From assembly GCA_950097015.1 (NCBI GenBank), contig CATNEN010000008.1, forward strand, positions 682,001 through 746,000: a stretch of 64,000 nucleotides of DNA. Reading direction: 5' to 3'. The notes beneath the pieces were generated by a model that worked only from the letters and a program-made list of their open reading frames with translations, had not been told where the DNA came from and did not search any database. Shown piece after piece: positions 29,377-63,990 of this stretch. A program made the translations under genes and the position numbers. Source of the stretch: Macrostomum hystrix. Its lineage: Eukaryota > Animalia > Platyhelminthes. Every line of letters begins with the position of its first letter. The first letter of the stretch is position 1.

Positions 29377-29750
29377 ATGGCGTTTCTGTTGCCATTTTTA
29401 TTGTTGCTATGGCAACAGCCTCCAATCTGTCACTGTCTGCTTCATCGGAGCTGCACAGAAGAGCTGAACCTGTACGTGGTAGTTCCCAGATCCACCGCCT
29501 ATTTCGTGAATGCCGCCCTGATTGAACCGGCTTACAGGTTGGGCTGGCAGGTTGTGAGGCGGAAACGGGCCGATCTGCACCCGTTGCTAACGGGAAACCG
29601 GGTCAAGCACACCTTCATATTCGAGGATGTCAAATGGTACGAGAAGGTGCTGGCCGGTCTAGCGAAAGACTGGCCAGCTGAGCTCGAGACCGTGGATCCC
29701 TACTATCTCAATTATAGGATGAACGCCTACTTCTACAATGTGTCCGTGGG
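29377..29750 (+). CDS. Receptor guanylyl cyclase variable cassette A, exon 1 (signal peptide + start of ANF-receptor-type ectodomain)
   Basis: MAFLLPFLLLLW signal, LNLYVVVP beta-strand/helix start typical of the NPR ectodomain; donor GG|gtgagc at 29751 (phase 2) matches the phase-2 acceptor at 36667. Confidence 0.78.
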
Positions 29751-29789
29751 GTGAGCTGGTTTGGCGCATTGCTTTTACTTGCTTTCTGG

Positions 29790-30525
29790 CAGAGAGAGGG
29801 AAGATAAGAGAGTGAGGGAAGATAAGAGAGTGAGGGTTAGATAAGAGAGTGAGGGAAGATAAGAGAGTGAGGGAAGATAAGAGAGTGAGGGTTGATAAGA
29901 GAGTGAGGGAAGATAAGAGAGTGAGGGAAGATAAGAGAGTGAGGGAAGATAAGAGAGTGAGAGAAAGATAAGAGAGTGAGAGAAGATAAGAGAGTGAGGG
30001 AAGATAAGAGAGTGAGGGAAGATAAGAGAGTGAGGGAAGATAAGAGAGTGAGGGAAGATAAGAGAGTGAGGGAAGATAAGAGAGTGAGGGAAGATAAGAG
30101 AGTGAGGGAAGATAAGAGAGTGAGGGAAGATAAGAGAGTGAGGGAAGATAAGAGAGTGAGAGAAGATAAGAGAGTGAGGGAAGATAAGAGAGTGAGGGAA
30201 GATAAGAGAGTGAGGGAAGATATGAGAGTGAGGGTTGATAAGAGAGTGAGGGAAGATAAGAGAGTGAGGGAAGATATGAGAGTGAGGGAAGATAAGAGAG
30301 TGAGGGAAGATATGAGAGTGAGGGTTGATAAGAGAGTGAGGGAAGATAAGAGAGTGAGGGAAGATAAGAGAGTGAGGGAAGATAAGAGAGTGAGGGAAGA
30401 TAAGAGAGTGAGAGAAGATAAGAGAGTGAGGGAAGATAAGAGAGTGAGAGAAGATAAGAGAGTGAGGGAAGATAAGAGAGTGAGGGAAGATAAGAGAGTG
30501 AGGGAAGATAAGAGAGTGAGGGAAG
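29790..30525. repeat. 18-bp purine minisatellite (gagagtgagggaagataa)n
   Basis: Tandem repetition; source of the REDKRV ORF. Confidence 0.95.
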
Positions 30526-31006
30526 GTGTGCAGATAGTGGGGAAGGTGGGAGAGAGTGAGGACAGGTTGCAGAGTGTGAGAGTATTTTTTTGTGCTGGAG
30601 AGTAGAGAGTTCAAATTGTTTTAAATCGATTTGTAAATATATATATGGTTACTTTTTTGAAGCACAAAGGCAGTGTATATTTAACAGTGCATACTGTTGT
30701 TTTTTAAGTGTACTCGCCGCAATAGTTACTAATGTTACTATGGTGATAAGATACGAGTAACAACAATTAAATTTCTAAACTGGCTGGCTAGCTGAGTTCT
30801 GTAGTGAGGGGATTATTTGCCTGATTGGCATTCTGGTGCAGAGACCCCCAGTCACAGGCGGTCCACAGTTGAAATTGGACCGATCTATCAAAGAGACCGA
30901 TTCGAGCTTGGGTCAGAGGCGCAAACTAAAAGAATTGTAGCTAAATTTGTAGCCATATTTTATTTAACGGTAGGACTACCAAGCCATTTTGCCGCCCGTT
31001 TTTATA

Positions 31007-31552
31007 CCAAGGGGGGGATTTCCCCCCTGACAATTTTTTTTGGCAGCGCCCGAATGCCAACAGCGTTGGGTGGTGACTGATTGGTTGACAGACTAGGCGA
31101 TGGTGTCCTGTGGTTGAGCTGCGCCTAATATTTTGGCTTGAGCATTGAAATTTGAGAAATTCGCGTCAGGGTGTCCATAGTAGCTTAGTTCCACCTGTTG
31201 TAGCCCTTGAAGGTCCAGCAGTCTGTCTAGATAAAGGTAGGTGACCACCGAAGACGGAGATGATGCAGGAACACTCGGGTGACATGCTGATAAATTATGA
31301 AGGCCTGGCAAGGCCGCACTGAGGCGCAGTGCAAATTCGTGTATAGGGGTGTATGAAATACACTAGCTCTTATGGGAAAAATCTGACCTTCGGCCAGAAA
31401 CATTGAATATCTCGACGGTCTGAAGAGCTGGCGACTTGTTTCTTGTCTCAGAAGATGCGCAACACAAAGTTGGCCCGTGTTCTTGAGTTTCGTGTGCTTG
31501 CATTGTTCCGTTCGGGTGCAGCAAAACAAAATTGTCAGGGGCCCCCCCTTGG
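31007..31552. mobile_element. Non-autonomous DNA transposon/MITE (~546 bp) with ~45-bp terminal inverted repeats and TA/TATA flanks
   Basis: Left tata|ccaagggggggatttcccccctgacaattttttttggcagcgcccgaa; right ttcgggtgcagcaaaacaaaattgtcaggggcccccccttgg|tata. Confidence 0.78.
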
Positions 31553-32833
31553 TATACTTCTACTGTTAAAGTACAGTTTATCAATGAGCGGCAGAGTTTT
31601 ATGCAAAGCTTTCATACGACCTTTGCCACAATTAGCATTAGGGCGTATATTACACACATCAAGAAATATTGTTCTAGCAAGATTGGCTGATCGATCTTTT
31701 CGTTCAAAAAAGTTTAATATTTTGCTTATACGCTCGTATGTAACGATAAATGTACATCCGGTGAGTGGGAAATAATGGAAGTGATGTACTACGTAGAATT
31801 AGAGAAATAAAATTAATTTGCTACTTCTGTTGAATTTAGTTGTTGCTATTTTTAGAACATTCAGTTTAGAAGCCTACTTATCTAACCACCCCAAACCCCA
31901 AGCGCGTGACTCGTAAATTCAGCCAATAAAGTTTTTCAGCAAGAACAACCACCTCACTCCATATATCGATCGCAAAGCTAGCTTGCTTAAAAATTGTTAC
32001 TATCTAGCTTGCTTAGAGCTAAAAGCTTAGCTTAAAGCTAGCTTGCTTAAAAATTTTTACTATCTAAAAGACTCATACTGCTATTAACGAAATTTCATAT
32101 ATGTTTATCGTCTCTAAAAGTCTAAAGAAAAGAACGTCAGTAACATACGGCTGTGATGTATAACTATAATATATTTGTTTGCTTTCGGATTTACGCGCAA
32201 GAATGGCGGACGCAGGCAAATAGAGAAAGAAAATGGACGACACTAGGCTGTTATACACGCTCATGGCCATCTGTACACAATCTAAGTCCACTCTCTCTCT
32301 TCTATTTTAACTTGACCAAGATTTCTTTGACTGCGTTCCTCTTTAAACAAGCAAATTAGTTGTCTGAGCAGAGCTGGGCCGGAGGCCTGGATATAATCAA
32401 ATAAATCAGAGCTGCACAAAATGAAGTCGAACCGCTAAACAAGAGGCATGTTGTCTTCCGACTTCCCTTGGCTCCTTCATCGATCGTACGGAAGCGCGAG
32501 TTTGTCTCTTGCATCTTTATTCCGAGTCTTCACTCACTGCAGATCGCACTATATATTTTTAGCCCATACTTCTCTCGCCTGCAGTCACTATAATGTCTCG
32601 AGGCAGTGTAGGCTGAGGGAGGGGGGCATTGCGTGACTTCCGCGTCAAGAGATCCATGCGATTCCTACCTGAGCAGACTCAAACTAGCTCTAGCAACTGC
32701 TAAACAGACAGCTGAGAAAAATCTGCATGTATATATATGCATTACTGATTCTGCGAATGATCAATGAATTCGAGAAATGCTGCCACATCAGAGCTGTTGA
32801 TCTATTTCTGACACCTTTGATCAGCTGACTTTA

Positions 32834-33300
32834 CTCATTCCATTCGACGCATCGCTCATTCCATTCGACGCATCGCTCATTCCATTCGACGCATCGCTCA
32901 TTCCATTCGACGCATCGCTCATTCGATTCGACGCATCGCTCATTCCATTCGACGCATCGCTCATTCCATTCGACGCATCGCTCATTCCATTCGACGCATC
33001 GCTCATTCCATTCGACGCATCGCTCATTCGATTCGACGCATCGCTCATTCCATTCGACGCATCGCTCATTCCATTCGACGCATCGCTCATTCCATTCGAC
33101 GCATCGCTCATTCCATTCGACGCATCGCTCATTCCATTCGACGCATCGCTCATTCGATTCGACGCATCGCTCATTCGATTCGACGCATCGCTCATTCGAT
33201 TCGACGCATCGCTCATTCGATTCGACGCATCGCTCATTCGATTCGACGCATCGCTCATTCCATTCGACGCATCGCTCATTCGATTCGACGCATCGCTCAT
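32834..33300. repeat. 21-bp minisatellite (ctcattccattcgacgcatcg)n
   Basis: Tandem repetition. Confidence 0.95.
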
Positions 33301-33309
33301 TCTCATTCC

Positions 33310-33500
33310 AAAGGAAAGAGATGAGACAGTGGAGAAACGAGACAGGGGAGAGATGAGACAGTGGAGAAACGAGACAGGGGAGAGATGAGGCAGGGGAGAG
33401 ATGAGACAGTGGAGAAACGAGACAGGGGAGAGATGAGACAGGGGAGAGATGAGACAGGGGAGAGATGAGACAGGGGAGAGATGAGACAAGGGAGAGATGG
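33310..33500. repeat. 16-bp minisatellite (gagatgagacagggga)n
   Basis: Tandem repetition; reverse complement of the 15838-16156 unit. Confidence 0.85.
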
Positions 33501-33704
33501 GACTCTCCATCTCCAGATAAGAGAGGAGACAGGAGAAAGATAAGACAGGATACTGTTTGTGTTGGAAGATGGCAACGGGCCAGATTTGGGAGCTTCGAGG
33601 GCCGCATCTGGCCCCCCCGACCCGACCCTTGCCGACCCCAGCTTGGGACAGTTCGTAACGAATGAATTTAGAAGAACATATTGAAAAGTAAAAAAGTGCA
33701 CAGA

Positions 33705-35210
33705 GATGATGCTGGTTAGTGCTGAATGATGCTGGTTAGTGCTGGATGATGCTGGTTAGTGCTGGATGATACTGGTTAGTGCTGAATGATGCTGGTTAGT
33801 GCTGAATGATGCTGGTTAGTGCTGGATAATGCTGGTTAGTGCTGAATGATGCTGGTTAGTGCTGGATAATGCTGGTTAGTGCTGAATGATGCTGGTTAGT
33901 GCTGAATGATGCTGGTTAGTGCTGGATGATGCTGGTTAGTGCTGGATGATGCTGGTTAGTGCTGAATGATGCTGGTTAGTGCTGAATGATGCTGGTTAGT
34001 GCTGGATGATGCTGGTTAGTGCTGGATGATGCTGGTTAGTGCTGGATGATGCTGGTTAGTGCTGAATGATGCTGGTTAGTGCTGGATGATGCTGGTTAGT
34101 GCTGGATGATGCTGGTTAGTGCTGGAATGATGCTGGTTAGTGCTGGATGATGCTGGTTAGTGCTGGATGATGCTGGTTAGTGCTGGATGATGCTGGTTAG
34201 TGCTGAATGATGCTGGTTAGTGCTGGATGATGCTGGTTAGTGCTGAATGATGCTGGTTAGTGCTGAATGATGCTGGTTAGTGCTGGATGATGCTGGTTAG
34301 TGCTGGATGATGCTGGTTTAGTGCTGAATGATGCTGGTTAGTGCTGGATGATGCTGGTTAGTGCTGGATGATGCTGGTTAGTGCTGGATGATGCTGGTTA
34401 GTGCTGAATGATGCTGGTTAGTGCTGGATGATGATGGTTAGTGCTGGATGATGATGGTTAGTGCTGGATGATGATGGTTAGTGCTGGATGATGCTGGTTA
34501 GTGCTGGATGATGCTGGTTAGTGCTGGATGATGATGGTTAGTGCTGGATGATGATGGTTAGTGCTGGATGATGCTGGTTAGTGCTGGATGATGCTGGTAG
34601 TGCTGAATGATGCTGGTTAGTGCTGAATGATGCTGGTTAGTGCTGGATGATGCTGGTTAGTGCTGGATGATGCTGGTTAGTGCTGGATGATGCTGGTTAG
34701 TGCTGAATGATGCTGGTTAGTGCTGGATGATGATGGTTAGTGCTGGATGATGATGGTTAGTGCTGGATGATGCTGGTTAGTGCTGGATGATGCTGGTTAG
34801 TGCTGAATGATGCTGGTTAGTGCTGAATGATGCTGGTTAGTGCTGGATGATGCTGGTTAGTGCTGGATGATGCTGGTTAGTGCTGGATGATGCTGGTTAG
34901 TGCTGAATGATGCTGGTTAGTGCTGGATGATGATGGTTAGTGCTGGATGATGCTGGTTAGTGCTGGATGATGCTGGTTAGTGCTGAATGATGCTGGTTAG
35001 TGCTGATGATGCTGGTTAGTGCTGGATGATGCTGGTTAGTGCTGGATGATGCTGGTTAGTGCTGGATGATGCTGGTTAGTGCTGAATGATGCTGGTTAGT
35101 GCTGAATGATGATGGTTAGTGCTGGATGATGCTGGTTAGTGCTGGATGATGATGGTTAGTGCTGGATGATGCTGGTTAGTGCTGGATGATGCTGGTTAGT
35201 GCTGGATGAC
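33705..35210. repeat. 20-bp minisatellite (gatgctggttagtgctg[g/a]at)n, ~75 copies
   Basis: Tandem repetition. Confidence 0.97.
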
Positions 35211-35704
35211 TGGGTAATCCTGCATGACTGGGTAATGCTGGGTGATTTCGGTTCGTGCTGGAGTGTCTAAATGAATGTAAGATAACTTCAGTGGCATTTT
35301 CAGTTAAATTAATGATTATCAGTTATTACAGTCTCATTGTGGCGTTCACATATTTGCATGAGAAGAATTTCTTTCAATAAAGGATTTCTACTCAACTCCA
35401 CCTCACACACTGCTCAGCAAGAAGCCAAATTACAGCTCCGCGTGTGCTTATGGGGGTTATTAGAGTCATTCCTTTCACCCTCTGAGCTCATTGTCTCACC
35501 TGCCTGTAATTATTGACCGCCTCTGACAAAGCCGATAAGAATGAAAGTAGAACACATAGCGATAGTCTATTTTTATAACCTACTTTTTTTCTATTTTTAA
35601 AACAAGAATTGAATGCCGAAAAAAGGAAAATTAGTTCAACCCTGTAGTTAAAAATAAGACAGCAAGCAAAAATTCCTGCCATCGATGCACATAAATACAC
35701 ATTG

Positions 35705-36570
35705 GGTGAGACAGGGAGAGATGGGGTGAGACAGGGAGAGATGGGGAGAGACAGGGAGAAATGGGGAGAGACAGGGAGAGATGGGGAGAGACAGGGAGAG
35801 ATGGGGAGAGACAGGGAGAAATGGGGGGAAGACAGGGAGAGATGGGGAGAGACAGGGAGAGACAGGGAGAGATGGGGAGAGACAGGGAGAAATGGGGGGA
35901 AGACAGGGAGAGACATGGAGAGATGGGGAAGACTGGGAGAGACAGGGATGGACAAGGAGAGATGGGGAGAAACAGGGAGGGACAAGGAGAGATGGGGAGA
36001 GACAGGGAGAGATGGGGGAAGACAGGGAGAGATGGGGGAAGACAGGGAGAGATGGGGGAAGACAGGGATAGATGGGGAGAGACAGGGAGAGATGGGGAGA
36101 GACAGGGAGAGATGGGGAGAGACAGGGAGAAATGGGGGGAAGACAGGGAGAGACAAGGAGAGATGGGGAAGACTGGGAGAGACAGGGATGGACAAGGAGA
36201 GATGGGGAGAAACAGGGAGGGACAAGGAGAGATGGGGAGAGACAGGGAGAGATGGGGGAAGACAGGGAGAGATGGGGGAAGACAGGGAGAGATGGGGGAA
36301 GACAGGGAGAGATGGGGGAAGACAGGGAGAGATGGGGGGAAGACAGGGATAGATGGGGAGAGACAGGGAGAGATGGGGTGAGACAGGGAGAGATGGGGAG
36401 AGACAGGGAGAGACAAGGAGAGACAGGGAGAGACAAGGAGAGATGGGGAGAGACAGGGAGAGACAAGGAGAGATGGGGAGAGACAGGGAGAGACAAGGAG
36501 AGACAGGGAGAGACAGGGAGAGATGGGGAGAGACAGGGAGAGACAAGGAGAGATGGGGAGAGACAGTGAG
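35705..36570. repeat. Purine-rich 10/20-bp repeat (gagacagggagagatgggga)n
   Basis: Tandem repetition. Confidence 0.93.
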
Positions 36571-36666
36571 AGTCTGGGTAATTTGAGAGAGATGCTGATT
36601 TAGAAAGCATCTGACAGCAGCCCTTCAGTTTCTGCCACCACCGCACCACCCCCGTCAATGCCACAG

Positions 36667-37082
36667 GCGCCTGTGCATCCACGCCTTCTTCGGGCCCGTG
36701 TCGGACTACTCGGTGACGCAGTTCCTGCCGTTCACCTTCCACAACCAGATCCCGCTGATCACACCGGGCGCCATTCACCGGGCATTCGGCAGCAAGAGTG
36801 GAGGCTCCCTGACTCGGGTAGCACCGCTGCTGGTGCAGGATCTCGGCAGCGTCATCGAGTCCCTGATGCTGAAGTACAGCTGGCGCAGGGTTGCTGTGCT
36901 CTATAACGAGCCCAACTACCGCCCGAGGGGCGACTTGCCCAGCAGCCCGGCTCCTGGCCAGAAGCTGCTCATCTGGTGCACCGGCGAGTCAAAATTAGCC
37001 GGCATCGACTGCGTCTTCGAGGTGGCCGCCTCTGCCACTCTCGTCACCACGCTGAAGCAAAAGATTGGCCTGACTCGGGCCT
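36667..37082 (+). CDS. Receptor guanylyl cyclase variable cassette A, exon 2
   Basis: ccacag|G CGC...: RLCIHAFFGPVSDYSV...IPLITPGA...SLTRVAP...YSWRRVAVLY (AFFGP, PLIT.GA, LTRV.P and W..V.VLY are NPR ectodomain motifs); donor T|gtaagt at 37083 (phase 1). Confidence 0.88.
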
Positions 37083-37088
37083 GTAAGT

Positions 37089-39852: not shown

Positions 39853-39871
39853 ATGAGACACGTCCTGCTGA

Positions 39872-39902
<31 letters not shown>

Positions 39903-40654
39903 CCCCACCGCTGAATCTGTTCAAAACCGTTCCAACGTTAGCACACCGGAGGCAACCATTTTTCTTCTGGCGCCAAAGTTTGAACCGCTTCGCGAGCTGG
40001 TGAGTCCACTGGAGCTGCTCAGCGCTACTCTAGACATTGCTCTGGACAGCGCTCTGGTTCGATCTGTGCCGGCGCAGCTGACAGCCGAGTCCAACGAGCT
40101 CGGCTGCGACTTCAAGGAGTCCATGGAGAGCATTATCGAGCTGCGGTGTCGTCAGCGAATCAGCGACAACAGAGCTCGCCTGCTTGTGGGGCCTCTCTGC
40201 TCCTACGCCGTCAACAATCTGTTCCTGTGGTTTAAGTCCCAGTCGGACGTCACCGTGACTGCCGGGGCCAGCTCCGTGGGATTCAACGAAAGGCAATACT
40301 CGGACCTCATCCGGATTGGGGCCACCTCCGATCAGGACTCGAACGCCTTCTTGGCCATTTTCAAAGCGCTGTCACCTTCCAAAGGTCGATGGAGACAGGC
40401 ATTTTACATATTCGAAGGCATGTCAAGGACACTGTCTGAGAAGTCCGACAAGCGACACGACGCTTGGTACTATGTAGACAATATCCAGTGCAAAAACCTC
40501 AACAGCGCGCTGAGACAGGCTCTGCGAAACGGCTACGGGTACAAGTGGTTCGACCTGAAGCCAAACGTTAACGAGGACCATCCGCAAACAGAGGAAGAGA
40601 AGAGAGGCCTCATTAATAGCACTCTATTGAATCGGGTGGGAAGTGACCATGCCG
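39853..40654 (+). CDS. Receptor guanylyl cyclase variable cassette B (single exon: signal peptide + ectodomain N-terminal part)
   Basis: MRHVLLMLLLLLQLLLL signal; TIFLLAP, LGCD, LLVGPLCSYA, VTAGASS, LIRIG, WRQAFYIF, IQCKNL motifs; donor G|gtgagt at 40655 (phase 1). Confidence 0.9.
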
Positions 40655-46431: not shown

Positions 46432-46441
46432 ATGCGACACT

Positions 46442-46472
<31 letters not shown>

Positions 46473-46784
46473 AGTTCAAAAGTCTGTGAGCCTGTCGGAC
46501 AGTCGTGACAGTCGGGTGACCTTTCGACTGCTCTGCCTGCTGCCACAGAACAGCCGCTACCAGTTCGATCAAAGTCTTGTGGCTCCGAGCACGGCGCTGG
46601 TTGCTGACACACTGACAAGACTTGGCTTCAACCAGCACTTCAGCCTGAACATTAGCTTTGAGAACTCCACCTGCTCAAACAAGGCCGCCCTGCCAGCCAT
46701 GGAGTATTATTACTCGGGTCAGGTGGACGGATTCGTTGGACTAGCCTGCCCCGAGAGTTGCAGCCAGATTGTACAATACTCTGG
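46432..46784 (+). CDS. Receptor guanylyl cyclase variable cassette C, exon 1
   Basis: MRHLLLLLLLLLLLV signal; RLLCLLPQNSRYQF, ENSTCS, VDGFVGLACPESC motifs; donor GG|gtgagt at 46785 (phase 2). Confidence 0.9.
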
Positions 46785-48257: not shown

Positions 48258-48613
48258 GGAGCGCTGGAACAAGCCCGTGGTGAGCATAGGCGCAGTCGAG
48301 ACTGGTTTCCGAGACAGCAGCAAGATCCAGTACAGGCACAACATATTCGTTAGGGTAAGCTTCGACAGCGGCCAGCTCATGAGCTCGATCCTGCAGTCAA
48401 TTTTCCTGTCCAACGGTTGGAGAAATTTCTTCGGCATGTTCACCTGGAGCCACGGCTACGCAAAGGAGGCGTGCGGCCTGCTAATGAACGACCTGAGCAA
48501 GATAAGACAGAGGATGAATATGAAGGCCGACTTCTTTGACACCTGGAATCGGACATTCACCCGGGAGGAGATTGCTAGCGCGTTTAGGAAAAAGATTGCC
48601 ACAGTCTACTCTG
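48258..48613 (+). CDS. Receptor guanylyl cyclase variable cassette C, exon 2
   Basis: ataccag|G GAG CGC TGG: ERWNKPVVSIGA...FVRVS...NGWRNFFGMF...EACGLL; donor G|gtaagg at 48614 (phase 1). Confidence 0.9.
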
Positions 48614-50089: not shown

Positions 50090-50530
50090 GCCCCATGCTT
50101 CTCCCCATATCCTTCTCCCCTATCTTTCTGCCCGATCATTCAACCCTGTCCTTCTCCCCTATCCATCCCCCTATCTGTCTCTCCCCTATGCTTCTCCCCC
50201 TCTCATTCTCCCCTGTCATACTCCCTTATCCTTCTCCCCCAACCCTTCTCCCCAATTCCTCTCCCCTATCCTTCTCCCCTTATCATTCTCCCCTATCACT
50301 CTCCCCTATCATTCTCCCCTATCATTCTCCCCTGTCCTTCTCCCCTATCATTCTCCCCTATCATTCTCCCCTGTCCTTCTCCCCTATCATTTTCATATAT
50401 CCTTCTCCCCTATCATTCTCCCCTTATCCTTCTTCCCAATCATTCTCCCCTGTCCTTCTCCCCTATCATTTTCATCTATCCTTCTCCCCTATCCTTCTCC
50501 CTATCATTCTCCCTATCATTATCCCCTTAC
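50090..50530. repeat. Degenerate ~13-bp pyrimidine repeat (ttctcccctatca)n
   Basis: Tandem repetition. Confidence 0.85.
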
Positions 50531-50872: not shown

Positions 50873-51176
50873 ATGTGCCATCGTCAGGTGGTGCCGCAGC
50901 AGCTGCTGCTACTGCTGCTGCTGGTCGGCTTCAGCGCCCAAGGCGCAGATCGCACGCTGAAGATCTCTGTTCTGCTGCCGGAATCTCGGCACAATATCTC
51001 CCAGATGAGTCTGGAGCGCGTTCTCCCCGTAGTGGACGTTGCTGTGGCGACCGCGAAAGCCTCCGGCCTGCTCTCCGGCGTCACTGTGCGGTTGCTTAGC
51101 AACGACAGCGAGTGCGACTACTCGGTGGCGCCGGTGATTGGCATGCTGATGCTGAAAGAGGTCGACCTCATGCTGG
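50873..51176 (+). CDS. Receptor guanylyl cyclase variable cassette D, exon 1
   Basis: MCHRQVVPQQLLLLLLLVGFSAQG signal; LKISVLLP, SLERVLPVVDVAV, NDSECDYSVAP, VDLMLG; donor G|gtgagt at 51177 (phase 1). Confidence 0.92.
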
Positions 51177-51248
51177 GTGAGTTTGAAGCTGCTGATGATC
51201 TGCATATACCTACTTTGCTTTTTGTGCTAGATGTTGAAGACCCAGGGA

Positions 51249-55812: not shown

Positions 55813-56323
55813 TCTTATCACTTAGCAAACTTCCTTTAGAATATTGAAACACCAGGTTGGGATGTGTTAGTAGCTATCAAATAATTTTTCTAACCTGGGC
55901 AGCTTTGCCAAAGTTTTTAGGTGGGAAAAGTACACACACACTGACAAACAATGTAAGTCATGAAAAAGCGACAAAGCCATGCCCCGCTATCTCCGGGTAT
56001 CACCGCCCATTGCGGGCGCGTGTTGGCGGGTTGGGCTTTTAAATCCCAACACATTTTGGCAGTGTGGGATTCTGGTGACGAGGGAAGACAGGACGGATGG
56101 GGTGAGAGTCAATAAGTGGAAAACTTTCAGTCCAGTGAGCCGGGCCGCAGTCATACATAACTTCATCCATCACTTTCTCACTTCTCCCTGTCAGTCAGTC
56201 AGTCTGTCTGCATCTCTATTTGCTATTTAGAAAATCAAGAATATGCATTGCAACTCATTTGAAATGCTGTCATTCGAATGTATCACGTGACTTAACTACC
56301 AGTCGCATTGTTGCAACTCACAG

Positions 56324-56749
56324 GTCCGTACTGTTCATTCTGCCTGGGCGCGGTGGCTCGCTACAATCGTTATCACCTGTACCAGCGGCCAATTATCACC
56401 TCTGGCGGCGGAGCCAGCGTCCTTAACAACAAGCGCGAGTACTTCAATTTGATTCGAGTTGGCCCAAATCACATGCAAATCGAAGAGATGCTTCTCAAAA
56501 TATTCGCCTATTACAATTGGAAGCCTAGGCCTGTACAGACTGTGCTCATTGTTGGCCCGGCTGATGAGATGAACTCAAGACGGCAACAGTCTGAGTCTAT
56601 CAACTCAGAGGCTCTGGTGATGAGTGTCGGTATTGAGCGCATGCTGACACAGCCGAATGTCAGCTATATCGCCCGCCGGCTAACTTACAAGCCGGGTGTG
56701 CCACACCTGGCCAATCAGCTGTTCAAGGTGCTCAGAGAAGAGGTTCGAC
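56324..56749 (+). CDS. Receptor guanylyl cyclase variable cassette D, exon 2
   Basis: ctcacag|GT CCG TAC TGT: GPYCSFCLGAVAR...RPIITSGG...NKREYFNLIRVGP...YYNW; donor C|gtaaga at 56750 (phase 1). Confidence 0.92.
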
Positions 56750-56848
56750 GTAAGATTCCGCGAGCATTCACCAGTGGATTGATAACCGTTGATTGAAACT
56801 GCAGCTGTTCAGTCTGCGGACTGGGTGGGGACCGCCATGGACATCATG

Positions 56849-57090
56849 GAGCTCGATTCCGCGGCGAGGCCACATTCATTTAATCGCAGGCTTGGGGCTC
56901 GTCGTGCACTTCACGCCCTATAGTTAAATTGTACTCTGCCTGACGATGAGAAAGTCAGGGCAGATGTACACACCTGTGTGAGCGTGTGCTTAGGAGTCAG
57001 CGAAATCGGCAGAATTGCCTCCTCGCTGGCTGCGGGTCTGGTGTCACCAAATGATGTGCCACTGCCCGCAGCCCTCCAGCAACTATTATT
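56849..57090 (+). mobile_element. 5'-truncated copy of SINE family 1
   Basis: gagctcgattccgcggcgaggccaca and ctgcctgacgatgagaaagtcaggg...ggcagaattgcctcctcgctggctgc shared with 8627-8952; tattattat tail. Confidence 0.85.
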
Positions 57091-57589
57091 ATGAATAGAA
57101 TGCTCATACTCGTGCTTCTATTCTGAAAATTCAGTGAAAAATATTATAGCCGAACATTACCACAGGCTGAATCATTGACAGTATCGAACCCGGCTAGCCA
57201 CCAGATCATCGCTTTGATGGCAACCCGTGGCTGATGCATAATTCAAGGCCTTCTTTGCCAGGGCTTCCTAGCGTTGCCCCGCTTCCAACTACTGCCAGGG
57301 GATTAAACTCCGCAGCACACGGAATCCCACCCAATCTTGCCGTGTGTCAGATTTTTCCCAGGGGGATTAATGCCCAGCCGGGGGAGCAATTCGAGACGAA
57401 TTTGACGGCGAAGAGCTTCAAACGATTGAGGCTCTGGGTTCCTGATCTTGGACTTCCGTGTGTGTGTTCGTGTGAGCGGGGGTTTCATTCGGCGGTCCAT
57501 CGCATATAAATAGCAAGAATGTTAAATCGAGTGCATCGGCCAGTTCTGTGCCTGTGACTTTTTGAATCTTCCAATGCGCTATTCCTCTC

Positions 57590-57590
57590 C

Positions 57591-57624
<34 letters not shown>

Positions 57625-58370
57625 TACTCTCCTTTTCACTCTCTCACTCTCACTCTCACTCTTACTCTCACTCTCACTCTCCTTCTCACTCTCAATCTCA
57701 CTCTCCCTCTCACTCTCGCTCTCACTCTCCTTCTCGCTCTCACTCTCCTTCTCGCTCTCACTCTCACTCTCCTTCTCCTTCTCACTCTCACTCTCACTCT
57801 CACTCTTACTCTCACTCTCACTCTCCATCTCACTCTCACTCTCCTTCTCCTTCTCACTCTCACTCTCACTCTCACTCTTACTCTCACTCTCACTCTCCAT
57901 CTCACTCTCACTCTCCTTCTCCTTCTCACTCTCACTCTCCATCTCACTCTCACTCTCACTCTCCTTCTCACTCTCAATCTCACTCTTACTCTCACTCTCA
58001 CTCTCCTTCTCACTCTCGCTCTCGCTCTCGCTCTCACTCTCACTCTTACTCTTACTCTAAACTCTCAATCTCCCCCTCTCTCTCTCCCTCTCCCTCTCCC
58101 TCTCACTCTCACTCTCCTTTTCACTCTCACTCTCACTCTTACTCTCACTCTCACTCTCCTTCTCACTCTCAATCTCGCTCTCACTCTCACTCTTACTCTT
58201 TCTCTAAACTCTCAATCTCCCCCCCTCTCTCTCCCTCTCCCTCTCCCTCTCACTCTCACTCTCCTTTTCACTTTCACTCTCACTCTCAGTCTCACTCTCA
58301 CTCTCCTTCTCCATCTCCCTCTTACTCTCAGTCTCCGTCTCACTAGCACTCTCTTTCTCCCTCTCCCTTT
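57590..58370. repeat. (ctcact)n-type microsatellite
   Basis: Direct observation. Confidence 0.93.
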
Positions 58371-59725
58371 CCCTCAGCCCCGCCTCAAGCAGCAATTCAA
58401 TTGCGCATACATTAAATTTCCGGCTTAAAATTATAAAACTCCAAATTCGGTTGGGTCTACAAAGGGATACGAAACCTTATATTGATGTTCTATTTATTTA
58501 ATTGGTCATTTCCGGCTTTGAATTATTACTGAGGAAATTCTTTGGCGATTGAGAGACTTGGGATTCAAAAAAGTCTAGGATAATACGAGAATTGAATTGA
58601 AGCCACAACGCAGCGAACTAAATGAGGTTTTCTGGGATTAGACCGATGTGAGAACAGATCCCTCTTCTTCCCTCTCCTTATCTATCCAGTCCTTTCCCTG
58701 GTAGTAAAAGCAGCAAACCAAAGCTGAATCTTCCCTGCTCTCATTTCCCACATTTGCCCGGCTGGAATTCCGCCTCCCCGTTTCCTGGGCGGATAAAAAA
58801 GCGATAGGCCGTGATTCCCGGGGCGGTAGTTTAGTGGATGGCATTAACCTCGGCATCGCGGCTACTACTGGGCCAGGCCAATTAGTGTGTGGCTCAGGTT
58901 TACAAAAATGTTGCTATGTGGTGTGCTTTGCTGCCTGTTGCTTGTAAAATAAAATGCTGTGTGGCGCCCAAGCTTACAGGCTTGGCACTCACTAGTCCCA
59001 GTCTCTTCAACGAGCAGCCCAGAGCTCGTAGTTCAGACTCCGATGGGAGGGAAATGGAAATCGATTTCCACAAGAAGATAATCAACCCGGATTTTTATAC
59101 CGCCTGCCGAGAGCGCAGATGAGGAGGAGGAAGAAGCAAATTTCTTCTTCTTGTGAGCTGCACTGGAGCCGCAGCGCAGATTTCATAGCACTCACCTGAG
59201 CTGGACTGGACACTGCTCAGGGTCTTCTGTATGCCCTTAGCTCGTGTTTCTTTTTACTTTATTGCTAAAAAATCGTTCTTTGCCTCATTCCACCGGTCAG
59301 GTAATCCCAACTCTAAAAAGAAAACAGTTGCTATGCTTGTCTCGAACAGTCTGCAATCCCGTGTGCCATCGACCGACTAATCTTTCTTCCTGAAAGAATG
59401 CCATATTGCTTTTACCGACAGCTGACTCCATTTAATTCCGAATAAAGGCGCAAAGTTAAAAGTGCAAGCGGAAAAGATGCCATTCTTTTAGGGGAGACAA
59501 TTTCTTGTGAAAGTAGAGAGTAGGAGAACTGGATTATGAAAAAGCGATAATAAGCTATGGTGGAAGATTGTAGCTAATTTAGTGAAAAACGAGAAAACCA
59601 TTTGTTCCTTTATCTAGCAATAGAAGCTTCCCAGTGATTGTCTCCCATCTGAATTAATTTAGCCGCGCAGGAAGCCACACAAGACGAGCCTAAATCTCAG
59701 GATAAGCAACAAAAATCTATTTCAG

Positions 59726-59837
59726 TTGTGGTTCTGTGCGCCGATCCCGACACGGTGAGGGACATCATGATTCAGGCCGAAGAACTCGGCTTCATCAATG
59801 GCGAGTACGTTTTCTTCAACATTGACCTCTTCAGCAG
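59726..59837 (+). CDS. Receptor guanylyl cyclase constant exon 1
   Basis: atttcag|TT GTG: xVVLCADPDTVRDIMIQAEELGFINGEYVFFNIDLFS, the classical NPR VxxC...GEYVFF.ID motif; phase 1 in, phase 2 out (AG|gtgagc). Confidence 0.93.
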
Positions 59838-60025
59838 GTGAGCAATTCCGGCCTCGCTCCGGTTTCCATATTGTCTAATTATTACTATGCGGGCTTCGAG
59901 GATCACGGAAGCAAGTGCTTTTGGACTTAGAAATTTAGTGCAGCTGCACTGATAAGATATGCACTATACAGCATTAGCACAGTAATGGTATCTAATAATA
60001 TCTTATCTGCTCTTTGATCCACCAC

Positions 60026-60565
60026 CCCATTCTCCGCCCAGCGATAAGCTGACACTATTCACCCACCACCCCATCCTCCGCCCAGCGATAAGCTGACACT
60101 ATTCACCCACCACCCCATCCTCCGCCAAGCGATAAGCTGACACTATTCACCCACCCCATCCTCCGCCCAGCGATAAGCTGACACTATTCACCCACCCCAT
60201 CCTCCGCTCAGCGATAAGATGACACTATTCACCCACCACCTACCCCATCCTCCGCCCAGCGATAAGCTGACACTATTCACCCACCACCCCATTCTCCGCC
60301 CAGCGATAAGCTGACACTATTCACCCACCACCCCATCCTCCGCTCAGCGATAAGCTGACACTATTCACCCACCACCCCATCCTCCGCCCAGCGATAAGCT
60401 GACACTATTCACCCACCCCATCCTCCGCCCAGCGATAAGCTGACACTATTCACCCACCCCATCCTCCGCTCAGCGATAAGATGACACTATTCACCCACCA
60501 CCTACCCCATCCTCCGCCCAGCGATAAGCTGACACTATTCACCCACCACCCCATTCTCCGCCCAG
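60026..60565. repeat. 41-49-bp minisatellite made of duplicated 3' splice-site sequence (ccccatcctccgcccagcgataagctgacactattcacccacca)n
   Basis: 12 upstream units containing ag|cgataagctg; the last unit supplies the real acceptor cag|cgagaagctg. Confidence 0.92.
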
Positions 60566-61128
60566 CGAGAAGCTGCGACTGCGGCCCTGGAATCGATCTG
60601 GCGACACAGCCGAAAGAAACGAGAAGGCCAGGCGGGCCTACCGCTCGCTGATGACAATCACCCTTCGAACTCCAAATTCTGAGGCCTATCGCAACTTTAG
60701 TCACCAGGTGAAGGCCCTGGCTGCTCAAAAGTACAATTTCACTTATCCGGAGAACGAAGTGAATAGTTTTGTCGGCGCCTTCCACGACGCCGTGCTGCTG
60801 TACGCTTTAGCCATCAACGACACGCTGCGAGACCACGGCAGCGAAGGCATTCGCAACGGCTCCCTCGTCACCGAGAAGATGAAATCGCGGAGCTTCGAGG
60901 GCATCACCGGCACCGTAATTATCAACGAGAATGGCGATCGAAATGCCAGCTACTCATTGTTGGACATGAACAAGGACACCGGAGACTTCGAGGTAGTGGC
61001 TCACTACAATGGCAATAATCGCACCTACGAGCCAGTCAATGGGCGAGACATCGACTGGAACAACGAGGACAACTTGCCACCGCCGGACATCCCCAAGTGC
61101 GGATTCGACTACTCGCGATGCAAGAAGG
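60566..61128 (+). CDS. Receptor guanylyl cyclase constant exon 2 (remainder of ectodomain)
   Basis: PW...AY.SLMTIT...FVGAFHDAVLLYALA...FEGITG.V.I.ENGDR..YSL...IDW...PPPDIPKCGFD.S.C; phase 2 in, phase 1 out (G|gtgagt at 61129). Confidence 0.96.
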
Positions 61129-61129
61129 G

Positions 61130-61890
61130 TGAGTGGATGGGATAGGCAGTGTGGGAAATACTGTGTGGGGGATGAGTGTACCGTGTGGGATAAGGAGTCT
61201 AGGGATGTGGATAGGGAGTGTAGGGATGAGTTTACAGTGTAGGAAACGGAGAGGAGGGATGAGTGTACAGTGTGGGATAGTGAGTGGAAGGATGAGTGTA
61301 CAGTGTGGGATAGTGAGTGGAAGGATGAGTGTACAGTGTGGGGTAGTGAATGGAGGGATGAGTGTACAGTGTGTGATAGGGAGTGCAGAGATGAGTATAC
61401 AGTGTGGGATAGGGAGTGCAGAGATGAGTGTACAGTGTGGGATAGGGAGTGCAGAGATGAGTATACAGTGTGGGATAGGGAGTGCAGAGATGAGTGTACA
61501 GTGTGGGATAGGGAGTGCAGAGATGAGTGTACAGTGTGGGATAGGGAGTGCAGAGATGAGTATACAGTGTGGGATAGGGAGTGCAGAGATGAGTGTACAC
61601 AGTATTAAAGGCAGTGCATAGATGATTATACACAGTATTAAAGGCAGTGCATAGATGAGTGTACACAGTATTAAAGGCAGTGCATAGATGATTATACACA
61701 GTATTAAAGGCAGTGCATAGATGAGTGTACACAGTATTAAAGGCAGTGCATAGATGATTATACACAGTATTAAAGGCAGTGCATAGATGAGTGTACACAG
61801 TATTAAAGGCAGTGCATAGATGAGTGTACACAGTATTAAAGGCAGTGCATAGATGAGTGTACAGTGTGGGATAGGCAGTGCATAGATGAG
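61130..61890. repeat. Two adjacent related 33-bp minisatellites (gatgagtgtacagtgtgggatagggagtgcaga and gatgagtgtacacagtattaaaggcagtgcata)
   Basis: Period 33. Confidence 0.92.
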
Positions 61891-61989
61891 TGTTCTCGGT
61901 TGAGGAAAACAGCACCATTTTTTAATCTATTCTTGGAAAACCTTTTGGCACCAAGAAAATCGCGTAGCTTTTCCCCTCCTCTGCGTCAG

Positions 61990-62849
61990 ACCTGTCCGAG
62001 ATAACCCTGTACGTGGTGGTGGTCCTGCTAGTCCTTATCTGCTTCATGACAGTCCTGATCTTCGTGATCTATCGGAAGCTGCGGCTAGAGAGCGAGCTGC
62101 ACGGCATGAACTGGCGCATCTCCTGGGAGGAGCTAGAGCCCACTGAGCGCGTTGCCGCTCGGAGACGCAGCATGGCTCAGCAGCAGCCTGTGCCAACGCG
62201 CCAGCAACAGCAGCAGCAGCTACCGCAGCCTCAGACTACAAGCAAGAAGAAACGATCTCAATCCAATGCTAAGAATCAGCAGCAGCAGCAGCAGCAGCAT
62301 CAGCAGGGTCATCGCAGATCAGATAGCGGCTGCCTGTTCTTTCCGAATCACCGCGCCTCCAGACGGTCGAATCGCGGCGATGACGCCAACGATGCGGCCG
62401 CTGAAACCCTGCCGCTGCGAGCATCGTCAGGAGCCGGCGTTGTCGCCGACGACAACCAGAGCGGCGGCCTGGTGGCCATCGGCATGGAACCGGATGGGGC
62501 CAGCATGGAATCGGTTGAGACCATCGCTGGAGTCCCGCTTAGCCAGATGTCCACAGCCCAGCTATTCGCCAAGACCGCCTACTACAAGGGCTCGCTGGTG
62601 GCCCTGAAGCGGCTGCATTTGAAAAACAAGCGCATTGAAGTCAGCAATCGCCTGCTGATGGAGGTGAAGCGAGTGAAAGATTTGGCGTCGGACAATGTTG
62701 TGAGATTCATTGGCGCCTGCTTGGACTCGCCACACGAGTGCCTGGTTACAGAGTACTGCCCCAAGGGTTCGCTGCAGGACATACTGGAGAATGACAACCT
62801 CAACTTGGACTGGATGTTCAAGATGTCCCTCATGGCCGACATCTGTCGG
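61990..62849 (+). CDS. Receptor guanylyl cyclase constant exon 3 (TM helix, juxtamembrane poly-Q insert, start of kinase-homology domain)
   Basis: gcgtcag|AC: ITLYVVVVLLVLICFMTVLIFVIY RK, ELHGMNWRI, YKGSLVALK, EVKRVKDL..DNVVRFIGAC, TEYCPKGSLQDILEN, LDWMFKMSLM.DI; donor CGG|gttggt (phase 0). Confidence 0.96.
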
Positions 62850-62892
62850 GTTGGTTTTTTAATCGAATTTTACTGTTTTTACTGTTCAGTTA

Positions 62893-63145
62893 CTGTGGGA
62901 GAAGGGGTGAGAGAAGAGCTGCAATGTGTGGGAGAAGGGGTGAGAGAAGAGCTGCAATGTGTGGGAGAAGGGGTGAGAGAAGAGCTGCAATGTGTGGGAG
63001 AAGGGGTGAGAGAAGAGCTGCAATGTGTGGGAGAAGGGGTGAGAGAAGAGCTGCAATGTGTGGGAGAAGGGAAGAGAGAAGAGCTGCAATGTGTGGGAGA
63101 AGGGGAAGAGAGAAGAGCTGCAATGTGTGGGAGAAGGGGTGAGAT
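62893..63145. repeat. 33-bp minisatellite (tgtgggagaaggggtgagagaagagctgcaatg)n
   Basis: Period 33 (62941, 62974). Confidence 0.92.
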
Positions 63146-63210
63146 AGGCGTTTTGTGTAATGTACGACTCGTAGAATACTGAATGCAAAACTTCTGCCCC
63201 TCTTACTCAG

Positions 63211-63382
63211 GGCATGATCTATCTGCATCACTCGTTCGGTTCCCATGGCAACCTGAAGTCTTCAAATTGCATGGTGGACTCGCGGTTCAGCCTGAAGATT
63301 GCGGACTTCGGCCTGCGCACCCTGCGCAGTCACAAGGTCGACTACAAGGACAAGGAGGACAGCGAATACTCCACCTACAGAA
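63211..63382 (+). CDS. Receptor guanylyl cyclase constant exon 4 (kinase-homology domain)
   Basis: ttactcag|GGC ATG: GMIYLH...[24 protein letters not shown] (pseudokinase HGN motif typical of rGCs); donor A|gtgagt at 63383. The cyclase domain lies beyond the window. Confidence 0.96.
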
Positions 63383-63392
63383 GTGAGTTCCC

Positions 63393-63770
63393 TAACCCTG
63401 TCTAACAGGTCCATAATCCTGCCTAACAGGTCCATAACCCTGTCTAACAGGTCCATAACCCTGTCTAACAGGTCCATAACCCTGTCTAACAGGTCAATAA
63501 CCCTGTCTAACAGGTCCATAACCCTGTCTAACAGGTCCATAACCCTGTCTAACAGGTCCATAATCCTGCCTAACAGGTCCATAACCCTGTCTAACAGGTC
63601 AATAACCCTGTCTAACAGGTCCATAACCCTGTCTAACAGGTCCATAACCCTGTCTAACAGGTCCATAACCCTGTCTAACAGGTCCATAACCCTGTCTAAC
63701 AGGTCCATAACCCTGTCTAACAGGTCCATAACCTATTTAACAGGTGTATAACCTGTCTAACAGGTCCCTG
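63393..63770. repeat. 21-bp minisatellite (ctaacaggtccataaccctgt)n
   Basis: Tandem repetition. Confidence 0.94.
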
Positions 63771-63978
63771 ACCTTGTCTAGTTCTAGACCAGTCACTTGT
63801 CTAACAATAAACCGTAGATTTCTATCACGTGATTACCTAATTAAACTTATAAGACGAGTTTTAAATTTTATATTTGCCTAAAATGCGATCGGCTGTGTTT
63901 TGAGTTTTGAGTTCGAGCTTGAGGTTTTCATTTCATCTCATAATCGAATGCGTACATTATATACTTTCCGATTTGCAG

Positions 63979-63990
63979 AAAAATTCTATG
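63979..63990 (+). CDS. Putative 12-nt phase-1/phase-1 micro-exon of the guanylyl cyclase
   Basis: tactttccgatttgcag|AAAAATTCTATG|gtaaga; frame-preserving, at the window edge. Confidence 0.35.

What the first reader, a model, noticed from the sequence alone, without database searches (positions are those of the whole stretch)
29377..63990. Protocadherin/UGT1A-like variable-constant architecture in a receptor guanylyl cyclase: four alternative ligand-binding cassettes, one shared signalling body
Seen: four tandem, same-strand, highly divergent but intact NPR-type ectodomain N-termini. A is 29377-29750 + 36667-37082 (790 nt), B is 39853-40654 (802 nt), C is 46432-46784 + 48258-48613 (709 nt), D is 50873-51176 + 56324-56749 (730 nt). 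Each has its own ATG, signal peptide and N-glycosylation sequons. All four lengths are 3n+1 and end at strong GT donors at the homologous position. I found no VVLC exon, TM or kinase exon between them; the only continuation is the phase-1 exon at 59726, giving TRA-F/DHA-V/VYS-V/EVR-L + VVLCADPDTVR in frame. Established: this junction corresponds to the position just before VIYIC in vertebrate NPR-A, and the upstream part holds the dimer interface and many hormone-contacting residues; rGCs act as dimers. Inference: promoter choice swaps ligand specificity onto one cGMP output, with up to 10 homo/heterodimer combinations. I am not aware of this design being described for rGCs.
Basis: partly seen in the sequence, partly recalled or inferred. 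Interest (0 to 1): 0.93.

Follow-up and report, generated by a model that had tools for sequence, protein, structure and literature searches.

The report
Receptor gene with four swappable fronts
A Macrostomum-type flatworm has one hormone-receptor (guanylyl cyclase) gene with four very different, conserved alternative front halves of its ligand-binding domain upstream of a single shared body; RNA data indicate a distal one is joined to that body, so one gene probably makes several receptors with different sensing parts.

Summary
Four same-strand 5' cassettes (A-D) each have an ATG, a signal peptide and an open frame of 236-267 codons. All are 3n+1 long, end at GT donors and join in frame to one phase-1 exon at 59726. 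No second copy of the constant exons lies among them. RNA contigs correct the constant exons: 59726-59837, 60566-61128, 61990-62849.

The cassettes are 17-24% identical to each other. Each type has a counterpart in Macrostomum lignano gene models (A 50%, B 51%, C1 77%, D 51%; constant ectodomain 60%), so all four are under selection.

An RNA contig from another relative joins a B-type cassette to VVLCADPDTVR at the same junction, and that chimera models as a complete NPR-A-type ectodomain.

In this species the contig ends at the acceptor fit a partner exon ending in G (B or C), not D or A. D1>D2 is spliced, but no D>constant junction was seen. "Only D is used" is therefore contradicted, but use of all four is unproven, and so is promoter choice.

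Two-exon cassettes create an acceptor-skipping problem that Pcdh/UGT1A clusters lack. C. elegans gcy-28 has isoform-specific promoters, a partial precedent.

Verdict: a new variant of the variable-first-exon design; interest 0.62.

The parts
29377..29750 (+). Cassette A, exon 1: ATG, signal peptide, N-terminal part. Its donor is phase 2.
   Evidence: Open frame, GT donor. In-frame stop 36 nt upstream of the ATG. An M. lignano A-like model reads across the A1|A2 junction.
36667..37082 (+). Cassette A, exon 2. Its terminal donor is phase 1 and its last base is T.
   Evidence: Pfam ANF_receptor 1.2e-7, profile positions 52-131. 49.5% identical to M. lignano A0A1I8JKT3 over 212 aligned residues.
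39853..40654 (+). Cassette B, a single exon: ATG, signal peptide, 267 codons. Its terminal donor is phase 1 and its last base is G.
   Evidence: Held at 1.00 of sampled words in RNA runs X3 and X6. B-type orthologues P0001 (51%) and P0002 (33%) form a 100/100 clade with it. P0002 joins the B type to the constant body in RNA contig L001.
46432..46784 (+). Cassette C, exon 1: ATG, signal peptide. Its donor is phase 2.
   Evidence: Pfam ANF_receptor 1e-3, profile positions 18-69. 77% identical to the C1-like part of M. lignano A0A1I8F652.
48258..48613 (+). Cassette C, exon 2. Its terminal donor is phase 1 and its last base is G.
   Evidence: AG acceptor, GT donor, in frame with C1 and const1. It aligns with the other cassettes.
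50873..51176 (+). Cassette D, exon 1: ATG, signal peptide. Its donor is phase 1.
   Evidence: Pfam ANF_receptor, profile positions 2-54, weak. The D cassette is 51% identical to M. lignano A0A1I8IW40.
56324..56749 (+). Cassette D, exon 2. Its terminal donor is phase 1 and its last base is C.
   Evidence: RNA contigs of X3, X5 and X6 start matching exactly at 56323/4 and carry off-stretch letters upstream, so the acceptor is used. Contigs of X5 and X6 read through the donor. Pfam profile positions 57-120.
59726..59837 (+). Constant exon 1 (VVLCADPDTVR...). It is the single phase-1 acceptor shared by all cassettes.
   Evidence: Joint 59837>60566 in contigs of all four runs. The constant contig begins at 59725 'G' and the intron contig ends at 59754 in X3 and X5. 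This pattern is reproduced only with a partner exon ending in G. Pfam profile positions 182-213.
60566..61128 (+). Constant exon 2: the C-terminal half of the ectodomain.
   Evidence: Spliced in all four runs. Matches NPR-A residues 258-427 at E 2.6e-38. Pfam ANF_receptor 1.7e-21.
61990..62849 (+). Constant exon 3: transmembrane helix, Q-rich juxtamembrane stretch, start of the kinase-homology domain.
   Evidence: The loose end behind 61128 reads ACCTGTCCGAG..., which is 61990 onward. Pfam PK_Tyr_Ser-Thr 1.6e-11.
63211..63383 (+). Constant exon 4: kinase-homology domain ([15 protein letters not shown]...).
   Evidence: In frame after const3. Pfam PK_Tyr_Ser-Thr 3.5e-8, profile positions 114-164.
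63979..63990 (+). Putative 12-nt constant micro-exon ((R)KILW). The gene runs on beyond the window.
   Evidence: Read from the sequence only: AG acceptor, GT donor, frame fits. Not tested.

Best explanation
This is one NPR/GCY-28-type receptor guanylyl cyclase gene of a Macrostomum-type flatworm. It is built as a cluster of variable 5' cassettes in front of one constant body.

The four ancient, paralogous cassettes are A, B, C and D. Each encodes a signal peptide plus the part of the ligand-binding ectodomain that matches NPR-A residues 1-208. Each ends in a phase-1 donor.

All cassettes are meant to be spliced to one constant acceptor at 59726. The constant exons supply the rest of the ectodomain, the transmembrane helix, the kinase-homology domain and, beyond the window, presumably the cyclase.

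Shown: the layout, the intactness and cross-species conservation of every cassette type, a B-type>constant join in a relative's RNA, and a join of a G-ending exon (B or C) to the constant exon in this species' RNA.

Inferred: all four cassettes are used; the choice is made by separate promoters, as in Pcdh/UGT1A; and the swap changes ligand or dimer specificity while the cGMP output stays the same.
For: Layout and frames.

Cassette homology to the ANF_receptor N-terminal half.

Constant part is NPR-A-like.

Conservation against M. lignano: A 49.5%, B 51%, C1 77%, D 51%, constant ectodomain 60%. Orthologue pairs have 99-100% support on long stems. Cassettes within the window are only 17-24% identical. 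The array therefore predates the species split and every type is under purifying selection.

M. lignano models place A-like before D-like+constant, and B-like before C1-like.

RNA contig L001 from a relative has a 5'UTR, an ATG and a B-type cassette, then ...CTGTCG|GTTGTGGTCCTATGCGCC, then const1 and const2, with the next intron retained. Its protein is a full Pfam ANF_receptor. It models as an NPR-A/NPR-C ectodomain, target-normalised TM-score 0.86.

In this species const1>2>3 are spliced. In X3 and X5 the intron contig ends at 59754 and the constant contig starts at 59725. X6 shows the same contig start behind an allelic bubble. A k=31 simulation gives this pattern only for pre-mRNA plus B and/or C, never with D or A.

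Constant-exon depth is 2.5-5.6 times D2 depth in four runs. B is fully present in RNA runs X3 and X6, while the intron stretch 56250-56322 has zero depth. B's presence is therefore unlikely to be mere pre-mRNA.
Against: No read or contig directly showing A2>59726, C2>59726 or D2>59726 was obtained. The B/C inference rests on contig end points, not on a listed joint.

Contigs of X5 and X6 read through the D2 donor, and no D junction survives in the cleaned graphs. In X2 the contig runs from the intron into const1 with no branch.

C2 and D2 have working-looking acceptors, and B>D2, A2>D2, C2>D2 and A1>C2 would be in frame. Productive long-range splicing from upstream cassettes therefore needs an unexplained skipping mechanism.

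Start sites and promoters are untested. The M. lignano proteins are gene predictions that chain cassettes wrongly, so they show the presence and order of the cassettes, not splicing. The relative's cassette is only 33% identical to B and may be a different B-type paralogue.
Confidence: 0.7

Rival explanations
1. Only one or two cassettes are productively joined to the constant body. The others would be expressed as short secreted half-domains or non-productive transcripts that end in the downstream intron, or be used only rarely.
For: Contigs read through the D2 donor, which gives a stop 15 codons on. No A or D junction survives in the contig graphs. No transcript evidence for A or C was obtained in any species.
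Against: All four cassette types are kept open and about 50-77% identical between two species whose constant ectodomain is only 60% identical. All four keep a phase-1 GT donor at the homologous position. Half of a two-lobed binding fold is unlikely to be stable alone (inference).
Confidence: 0.17
2. Assembly artefact. Four tandem full-length paralogous genes would have had their near-identical 3' bodies collapsed into one copy.
For: Every intron is packed with tandem repeats, which makes assembly hard.
Against: Independent M. lignano gene models also chain A-like with D-like+constant, and B-like with C1-like, with no constant exons between them. Cassette spacing is regular at 5-10 kb with unique flanks. 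Collapse would have to cut exactly between each donor and the next promoter. Constant depth is only 2.5-5.6 times D2 in RNA, which is not informative for DNA copy number.
Confidence: 0.04
3. Cassette exons are combined in series or mixed, for example C1-C2-D2-constant or A1-C2. That would give chimeric or tandem ectodomains rather than one cassette per mRNA.
For: The phases allow it: D2's acceptor and all terminal donors are phase 1, and A1 and C1 donors and C2's acceptor are phase 2. The X6 contig carries 713 letters upstream of D2, close to C1+C2 at 709 nt. M. lignano model A0A1I8F652 fuses B-like to C1-like in frame.
Against: The internal introns are at non-homologous positions, so mixed products would delete or duplicate core strands. 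The 713 letters fit D1 plus upstream sequence running to the tandem array at 50527 equally well. The M. lignano fusion is a predicted model. The relative's RNA contig has exactly one cassette.
Confidence: 0.07

Closest known systems
Clustered protocadherins and UGT1A (multiple variable first exon clusters; see PMC1885805, PMC7811963)
   Same: A tandem same-strand array of paralogous 5' coding units. Each has its own start codon and a donor. All face one set of constant exons. The variable part carries the recognition function and the constant part the shared output.
   Different: Here three of the four units are two exons with an internal intron, so downstream units expose acceptors. The variable/constant boundary cuts through a single two-lobed fold rather than between domains or repeats. 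There are only four units, 17-24% identical. One promoter per unit and stochastic or tissue-specific choice are untested.
C. elegans gcy-28 isoforms .c and .d (PMC9249223, citing Tsunozaki 2008 and Shinkai 2011, which I could not read)
   Same: The same NPR-like branch of receptor guanylyl cyclases; hits of the constant part are named gcy-28-like. Isoforms have separate promoters (3.2 and 2.9 kb), different ATG-containing 5' ends and a common 3' end. Expression differs: broad for .c, AIA neurons for .d.
   Different: The papers I could read describe two promoter-specific isoforms, not a four-unit array. How much of the ectodomain differs between .c and .d, and whether the join is at the same VVLC/IILC boundary, could not be checked here.
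Chelicerate sDscam clusters (PMC9258826)
   Same: An invertebrate receptor gene with arrays of 5' variable cassettes chosen by alternative promoters and joined to constant exons. Mis-joining and trans-splicing between cassettes are documented issues.
   Different: It is an Ig-domain adhesion receptor with tens of cassettes and homophilic recognition. It is not a peptide-receptor enzyme.
Vertebrate NPR-A/GC-A (PDB 1DP4, 1T34, 8TG9)
   Same: The constant ectodomain half is alike at E 2.6e-38. The full D-like and B-type chimeras align or model over the whole ectodomain. The junction is at R208|V209 just before VIYIC.
   Different: To my knowledge (not tested here) vertebrate NPR genes have one first exon. 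Diversity comes from separate genes (NPR1/2/3).

Membership tests
NPR/GCY-28-type receptor guanylyl cyclase | Periplasmic-binding-protein type I (ANF_receptor) ectodomain | tested here: met
   Pfam hits on the cassette pieces and on const1 and const2 at collinear positions. NPR-A E 2.6e-38. The relative's chimera models onto 1DP4 with target-normalised TM-score 0.85-0.86.
NPR/GCY-28-type receptor guanylyl cyclase | Single transmembrane helix followed by a kinase-homology domain | tested here: met
   Hydrophobic stretch ITLYVVVVLLVLICFMTVLIFVIY at the start of const3. PK_Tyr_Ser-Thr on const3 (1.6e-11) and const4 (3.5e-8).
NPR/GCY-28-type receptor guanylyl cyclase | C-terminal class III cyclase catalytic domain | not testable with these tools
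   It lies beyond the window's end at 64000. Longer homologues found with the constant part carry PF00211.
Multiple-variable-first-exon cluster (Pcdh/UGT1A type) | Tandem paralogous 5' units on one strand, each with its own start codon, and a single set of constant exons | tested here: met
Multiple-variable-first-exon cluster (Pcdh/UGT1A type) | Variable units have a donor but no acceptor, so downstream units are skipped automatically | tested here: not met
   A, C and D are two-exon units. C2 (48258) and D2 (56324) have AG acceptors, and D2's is used in RNA. Only B is a single exon.
Multiple-variable-first-exon cluster (Pcdh/UGT1A type) | Each variable unit is joined to the first constant exon in mRNA | tested here: inconclusive
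   A B-type>constant join is seen in a relative's RNA contig. In this species contig end points fit B or C. A and D junctions were not seen.
Multiple-variable-first-exon cluster (Pcdh/UGT1A type) | A separate promoter and start site in front of each unit | not tested
   No 5'-end data. The only support is an in-frame stop 12-69 nt upstream of each ATG and a 153-nt leader without upstream coding sequence in L001.

The most novel reading that the evidence does not exclude
All four cassettes are used, one per mRNA, from their own promoters in different cells or states. A single flatworm guanylyl cyclase gene would then make four receptors with different ligand-binding and dimer-interface halves on one cGMP-producing body. 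This array is conserved across Macrostomum, and a so far unknown mechanism makes upstream transcripts skip the acceptors of downstream two-exon cassettes.
Probability: 0.45. Interest if true: 0.78.

Novelty: new variant of a known kind. Interest (0 to 1): 0.62.

Why it matters
Receptor guanylyl cyclases are thought to diversify by whole-gene duplication: 27 genes in C. elegans, NPR1/2/3 in vertebrates. Here diversity would instead come from swapping half of the ligand-binding fold onto one signalling body.

That would be a natural domain-swap experiment. It would show that the NPR ectodomain tolerates very divergent N-terminal halves (17-24% identity) against one C-terminal half.

It gives a handle on orphan flatworm peptide signalling in a model that allows RNAi and transgenesis.

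The two-exon cassettes pose a clean splice-choice problem: how are competent acceptors skipped over 3-22 kb? A related problem may have been solved by RNA pairing in another gene of the same genome, according to an unchecked scan note.

It also flags that current M. lignano gene models for this locus chain the cassettes wrongly.

Tried and rejected
1. The search for homologous proteins with B found nothing in the allowed length range.

2. The same tool with the A-like region of the M. lignano model returned only two predicted models and no A>constant transcript.

3. The single read-laying run covered D2 to const2. The junction-bearing short contigs and the loose letters at 56323 and 59725 were not among the rows shown, so partners had to be inferred from contig end points.

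4. An allelic SNP as the cause of the contig break at 59724/5 was considered and rejected for X3 and X5. Their intron contigs run unbroken from 58383 or 58858 to 59754. The known A>C haplotype bubble (59702, 59715) closes at 59745.

5. P0001, a B-like part fused to a C1-like part, first looked like a real B>C1 splice. It is an M. lignano predicted model, so it counts only for gene order.

6. A search for docking/selector RNA pairing between terminal-donor flanks and the intron before const1 timed out or gave uninterpretable long duplexes.

7. Rfam found nothing in the window.

8. Tsunozaki 2008 and Shinkai 2011 are not held in the library, so the extent of the gcy-28 isoform difference is unverified.

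9. Literature searches for alternative first exons in guanylyl cyclases or natriuretic peptide receptors found nothing relevant.

10. No further cassette and no further constant exon were found in 1-29376.


Full report
**Observation.** The four cassettes exist exactly as described.

- A is 29377-29750 + 36667-37082 (790 nt).
- B is 39853-40654 (802 nt).
- C is 46432-46784 + 48258-48613 (709 nt).
- D is 50873-51176 + 56324-56749 (730 nt).

All are on the + strand and all are 3n+1 long. Acceptors are AG and donors are GT(A/G)AG. Each reads in frame into VVLCADPDTVR at 59726. Each ATG has an in-frame stop 12-69 nt upstream. Each cassette has a leucine-rich N-terminus and 1-3 N-glycosylation sequons. 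An open frame of 236-267 codons has a chance of about 1e-5 or less in random sequence.

Pfam places A2, C1, D1, D2 and the constant exon on the ANF_receptor profile in collinear order: 52-131, 18-69, 2-54, 57-120 and 182-213. B has no Pfam hit by itself but is significantly similar to D (tblastn 5e-8 and 3e-6). All four share the GP.C, P..T.GA and L.R[VI] motifs in a MAFFT alignment, with pairwise identity of only 17-24%. tblastn with the constant protein finds each constant exon once and nothing else below E=1. So there is no hidden VVLC, transmembrane or kinase exon between the cassettes, and no fifth cassette upstream. Upstream neighbours are a Ras/Rab-type last exon at 21903-22307 (+) and an Ets-domain exon on the other strand.

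**What the gene is.** const2 matches the NPR-A hormone-binding domain, residues 258-427, at E 2.6e-38. const3 opens with a transmembrane stretch and, together with const4, hits the protein-kinase profile, including the rGC-typical [15 protein letters not shown]. The cyclase domain is beyond the window. Longer homologues of the constant part carry it and are annotated as NPR1-like or gcy-28-like. An alignment of a full D-like ectodomain to rat NPR-A puts the variable/constant junction at R208|V209, just before VIYIC. The cassettes therefore encode the equivalent of NPR-A 1-208. From my knowledge of the NPR-A structures (not tested here), that part contains the chloride site, the distal-lobe dimer helices and many ANP contacts.

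Predicted isoforms in Haliotis, Gigantopelta, Saccoglossus and Ancylostoma start 10-22 residues before the same V[IV]LCAS motif. This suggests an old intron at this boundary.

**Organism.** Earlier scan notes call the genome Macrostomum-type. My hits to M. lignano proteins at 50-77% identity fit a congener or near relative, not M. lignano itself.

**RNA evidence in this species.** I had one read-laying run on 56250-61200 with four runs kept as Logan contigs. The runs are RNA.

- *Constant exons.* All four runs show the joint 59837>60566 (GT..AG). Two runs show the continuation from 61128 to ACCTGTCCGAG..., which is 61990 onward. This corrects the constant exon ends.
- *D cassette.* In X3, X5 and X6, contigs start matching at D2's acceptor (56323/4) and carry 491, 38 and 713 further letters upstream. 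The intron stretch 56250-56322 has zero depth in all four runs. So D1>D2 is spliced, and pre-mRNA from upstream promoters is below detection there. In X5 and X6, contigs read through the D2 donor into the intron.
- *The acceptor.* In X3 and X5 the unspliced-intron contig ends at 59754 and the constant contig begins at 59725, the G before the exon. That is a k-1 overlap and therefore an in-branch in the de Bruijn graph. X6 shows the same constant-contig start behind an allelic bubble.
- *Simulation.* I simulated k=31 unitigs for mixtures of transcripts. Pre-mRNA plus B and/or C, whose last base is G, reproduces both end points. With D (last base C) or A (last base T) the constant unitig would start at 59726. 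With pre-mRNA alone there is no break.
- *SNP alternative.* A SNP does not explain the break, because the intron contigs are unbroken for 0.9-1.4 kb up to 59754.
- *Depth.* Constant-exon depth is 3.2, 3.9, 5.6 and 2.5 times D2 depth in X3, X5, X6 and X2. D can account for only a minority of constant-containing RNA.
- *B in RNA.* B is held at 1.00, 1.00, 0.84 and 0.82 of sampled words in X3, X6, X7 and X5.
- *X2.* X2 has the lowest depth and shows no branch.

Together these results contradict "only D splices to 59726" and point to B (or C) as the main partner in these samples. They are indirect: no listed contig bridges the junction.

**Evidence from relatives.** An exhaustive HMMER search with B found two relatives. 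P0002 comes from Logan RNA contig L001. The contig has a 153-nt leader, an ATG and a B-type cassette (33% identical to B). The join reads ...AAACTGTCG|GTTGTGGTCCTATGCGCC, and const1 and const2 follow (76% identical to the window's). It ends in the retained next intron (GTGAGT). This is a partly processed mRNA in which a B-type cassette is joined to the constant body at the same phase-1 junction. Its protein is a complete Pfam ANF_receptor domain (profile 4-352). With a 29-sequence alignment it models (pLDDT 78.6, pTM 0.79) as an NPR-A/NPR-C ectodomain: Foldseek E 7e-34, target-normalised TM-score 0.86.

The other hits are M. lignano UniRef gene models.

- A0A1I8F652 has a B-like part (51%) chained to a C1-like part (77%).
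- A0A1I8JKT3 has an A-like part (49.5%) chained to part of a D-like cassette plus the constant exons.
- A0A1I8FNK8 is A-like only.
- A0A1I8IW40 has a D-like cassette (51%) plus the constant exons (60%).

These are predictions that chain exons wrongly, so they say nothing on splicing. They do show that all four cassette types exist in a second species, in the same order (A before D, B before C), with no constant exons between them. A maximum-likelihood tree pairs each window cassette with its counterpart at 99-100% support on long stems. The array is thus much older than the species split. Cassettes that diverged to about 20% from each other are held at 50-77% between species, close to the 60% of the constant ectodomain. 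Neutral relics would not stay open at that distance.

**How it most likely works.** Each cassette is a first coding unit. Its terminal phase-1 donor is joined to the single acceptor at 59726. This gives receptors that share everything from NPR-A position 209 onward but differ in the N-terminal half of the binding domain. Choice by separate promoters is the default by analogy with Pcdh, UGT1A and sDscam, and with gcy-28.c/.d of C. elegans, which have separate promoters and start codons and a common 3' end (PMC9249223). It is not shown here, and choice by spliced-leader addition on a long precursor is an untested alternative.

A real difference from the classical clusters is that A, C and D each have an internal intron. 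The three introns sit at non-homologous positions, so they were gained after the cassettes duplicated. C2 and D2 therefore expose acceptors that upstream transcripts must skip. B>D2, A2>D2, C2>D2 and A1>C2 would even be in frame. What enforces one cassette per mRNA is unknown, and my crude pairing search gave nothing.

**Rivals.**

1. Only a subset is productive (0.17). This is favoured by D2 read-through and the lack of A, C and D junction evidence. It is disfavoured by conservation of frames and donors.
2. Assembly collapse of four full genes (0.04). This is disfavoured by the independent M. lignano models.
3. Serial or mixed use of cassette exons (0.07). The phases allow it and the 713-letter contig tail is compatible. 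But the relative's RNA has one cassette, and mixed products would break the fold.

**Novelty.** The variable-first-exon design is well known (PMC1885805, PMC7811963, PMC9258826), and promoter-specific isoforms exist in gcy-28. I found no description of an array of alternative ligand-binding half-domains in a receptor guanylyl cyclase. The boundary inside one fold and the two-exon cassettes are unusual. I rate it a new variant of a known kind, interest 0.62. An unchecked first-reader note (s1-286128) reports a similar battery of phase-1 first exons in another gene of this genome, so the design may recur there.

Noticed in passing
window 29750-63800 (all introns of the gene): In 10 of 11 introns a different minisatellite array (units of 12-64 nt) begins 6-182 nt after the donor. 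The array 60019-60575 runs right over the acceptor of const2 (60564-5), so the acceptor AG is part of the last repeat unit. It looks like a systematic feature of introns in this gene, and perhaps in this genome.
   Followed up: partly
window 56850-57082: A dispersed repeat inside the D2-const1 intron has RNA-contig depth above 5000 in all four runs and many divergent copies (loose ends, small joints). No Rfam family matches it.
   Followed up: partly
window 59702 and 59715: Two linked A>C differences in the intron just before const1 form an allelic bubble in runs X6 and X2. There are thus two haplotypes in the sampled worms. In X2 the C-C haplotype contig runs unspliced into const1.
   Followed up: no
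window 58383-59754: The last 1.3 kb of the intron before const1 has slightly more RNA depth than exon D2 in all four runs, whereas the intron just before D2 has none. This may be slow removal of the shared intron end, or an internal start that gives N-terminally truncated transcripts. The short-first-exon isoforms predicted in Haliotis, Gigantopelta, Saccoglossus and Ancylostoma start 10-22 residues before the same motif.
   Followed up: partly
M. lignano UniRef models A0A1I8F652, A0A1I8JKT3, A0A1I8IW40, A0A1I8FNK8 (P0001, P0006, P0004, P0094): The public gene models of the orthologous M. lignano locus chain different cassettes into one protein (B-like+C1-like; A-like+part of D-like+constant) or start in translated repeats. 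These look like annotation errors caused by this architecture.
   Followed up: partly
window 21903-22307 (+) and 10252-10785 (-): Neighbouring genes: a Ras/Rab-family last exon (Pfam Ras 2.4e-28) 7 kb upstream of cassette A, and an Ets-domain exon on the opposite strand.
   Followed up: partly
window 62150-62310: The juxtamembrane region of const3 carries long glutamine runs (QQQQQQ..., a weak TFIIA-like low-complexity hit) between the transmembrane helix and the kinase-homology domain. This spacer is unusually long for this receptor family.
   Followed up: no
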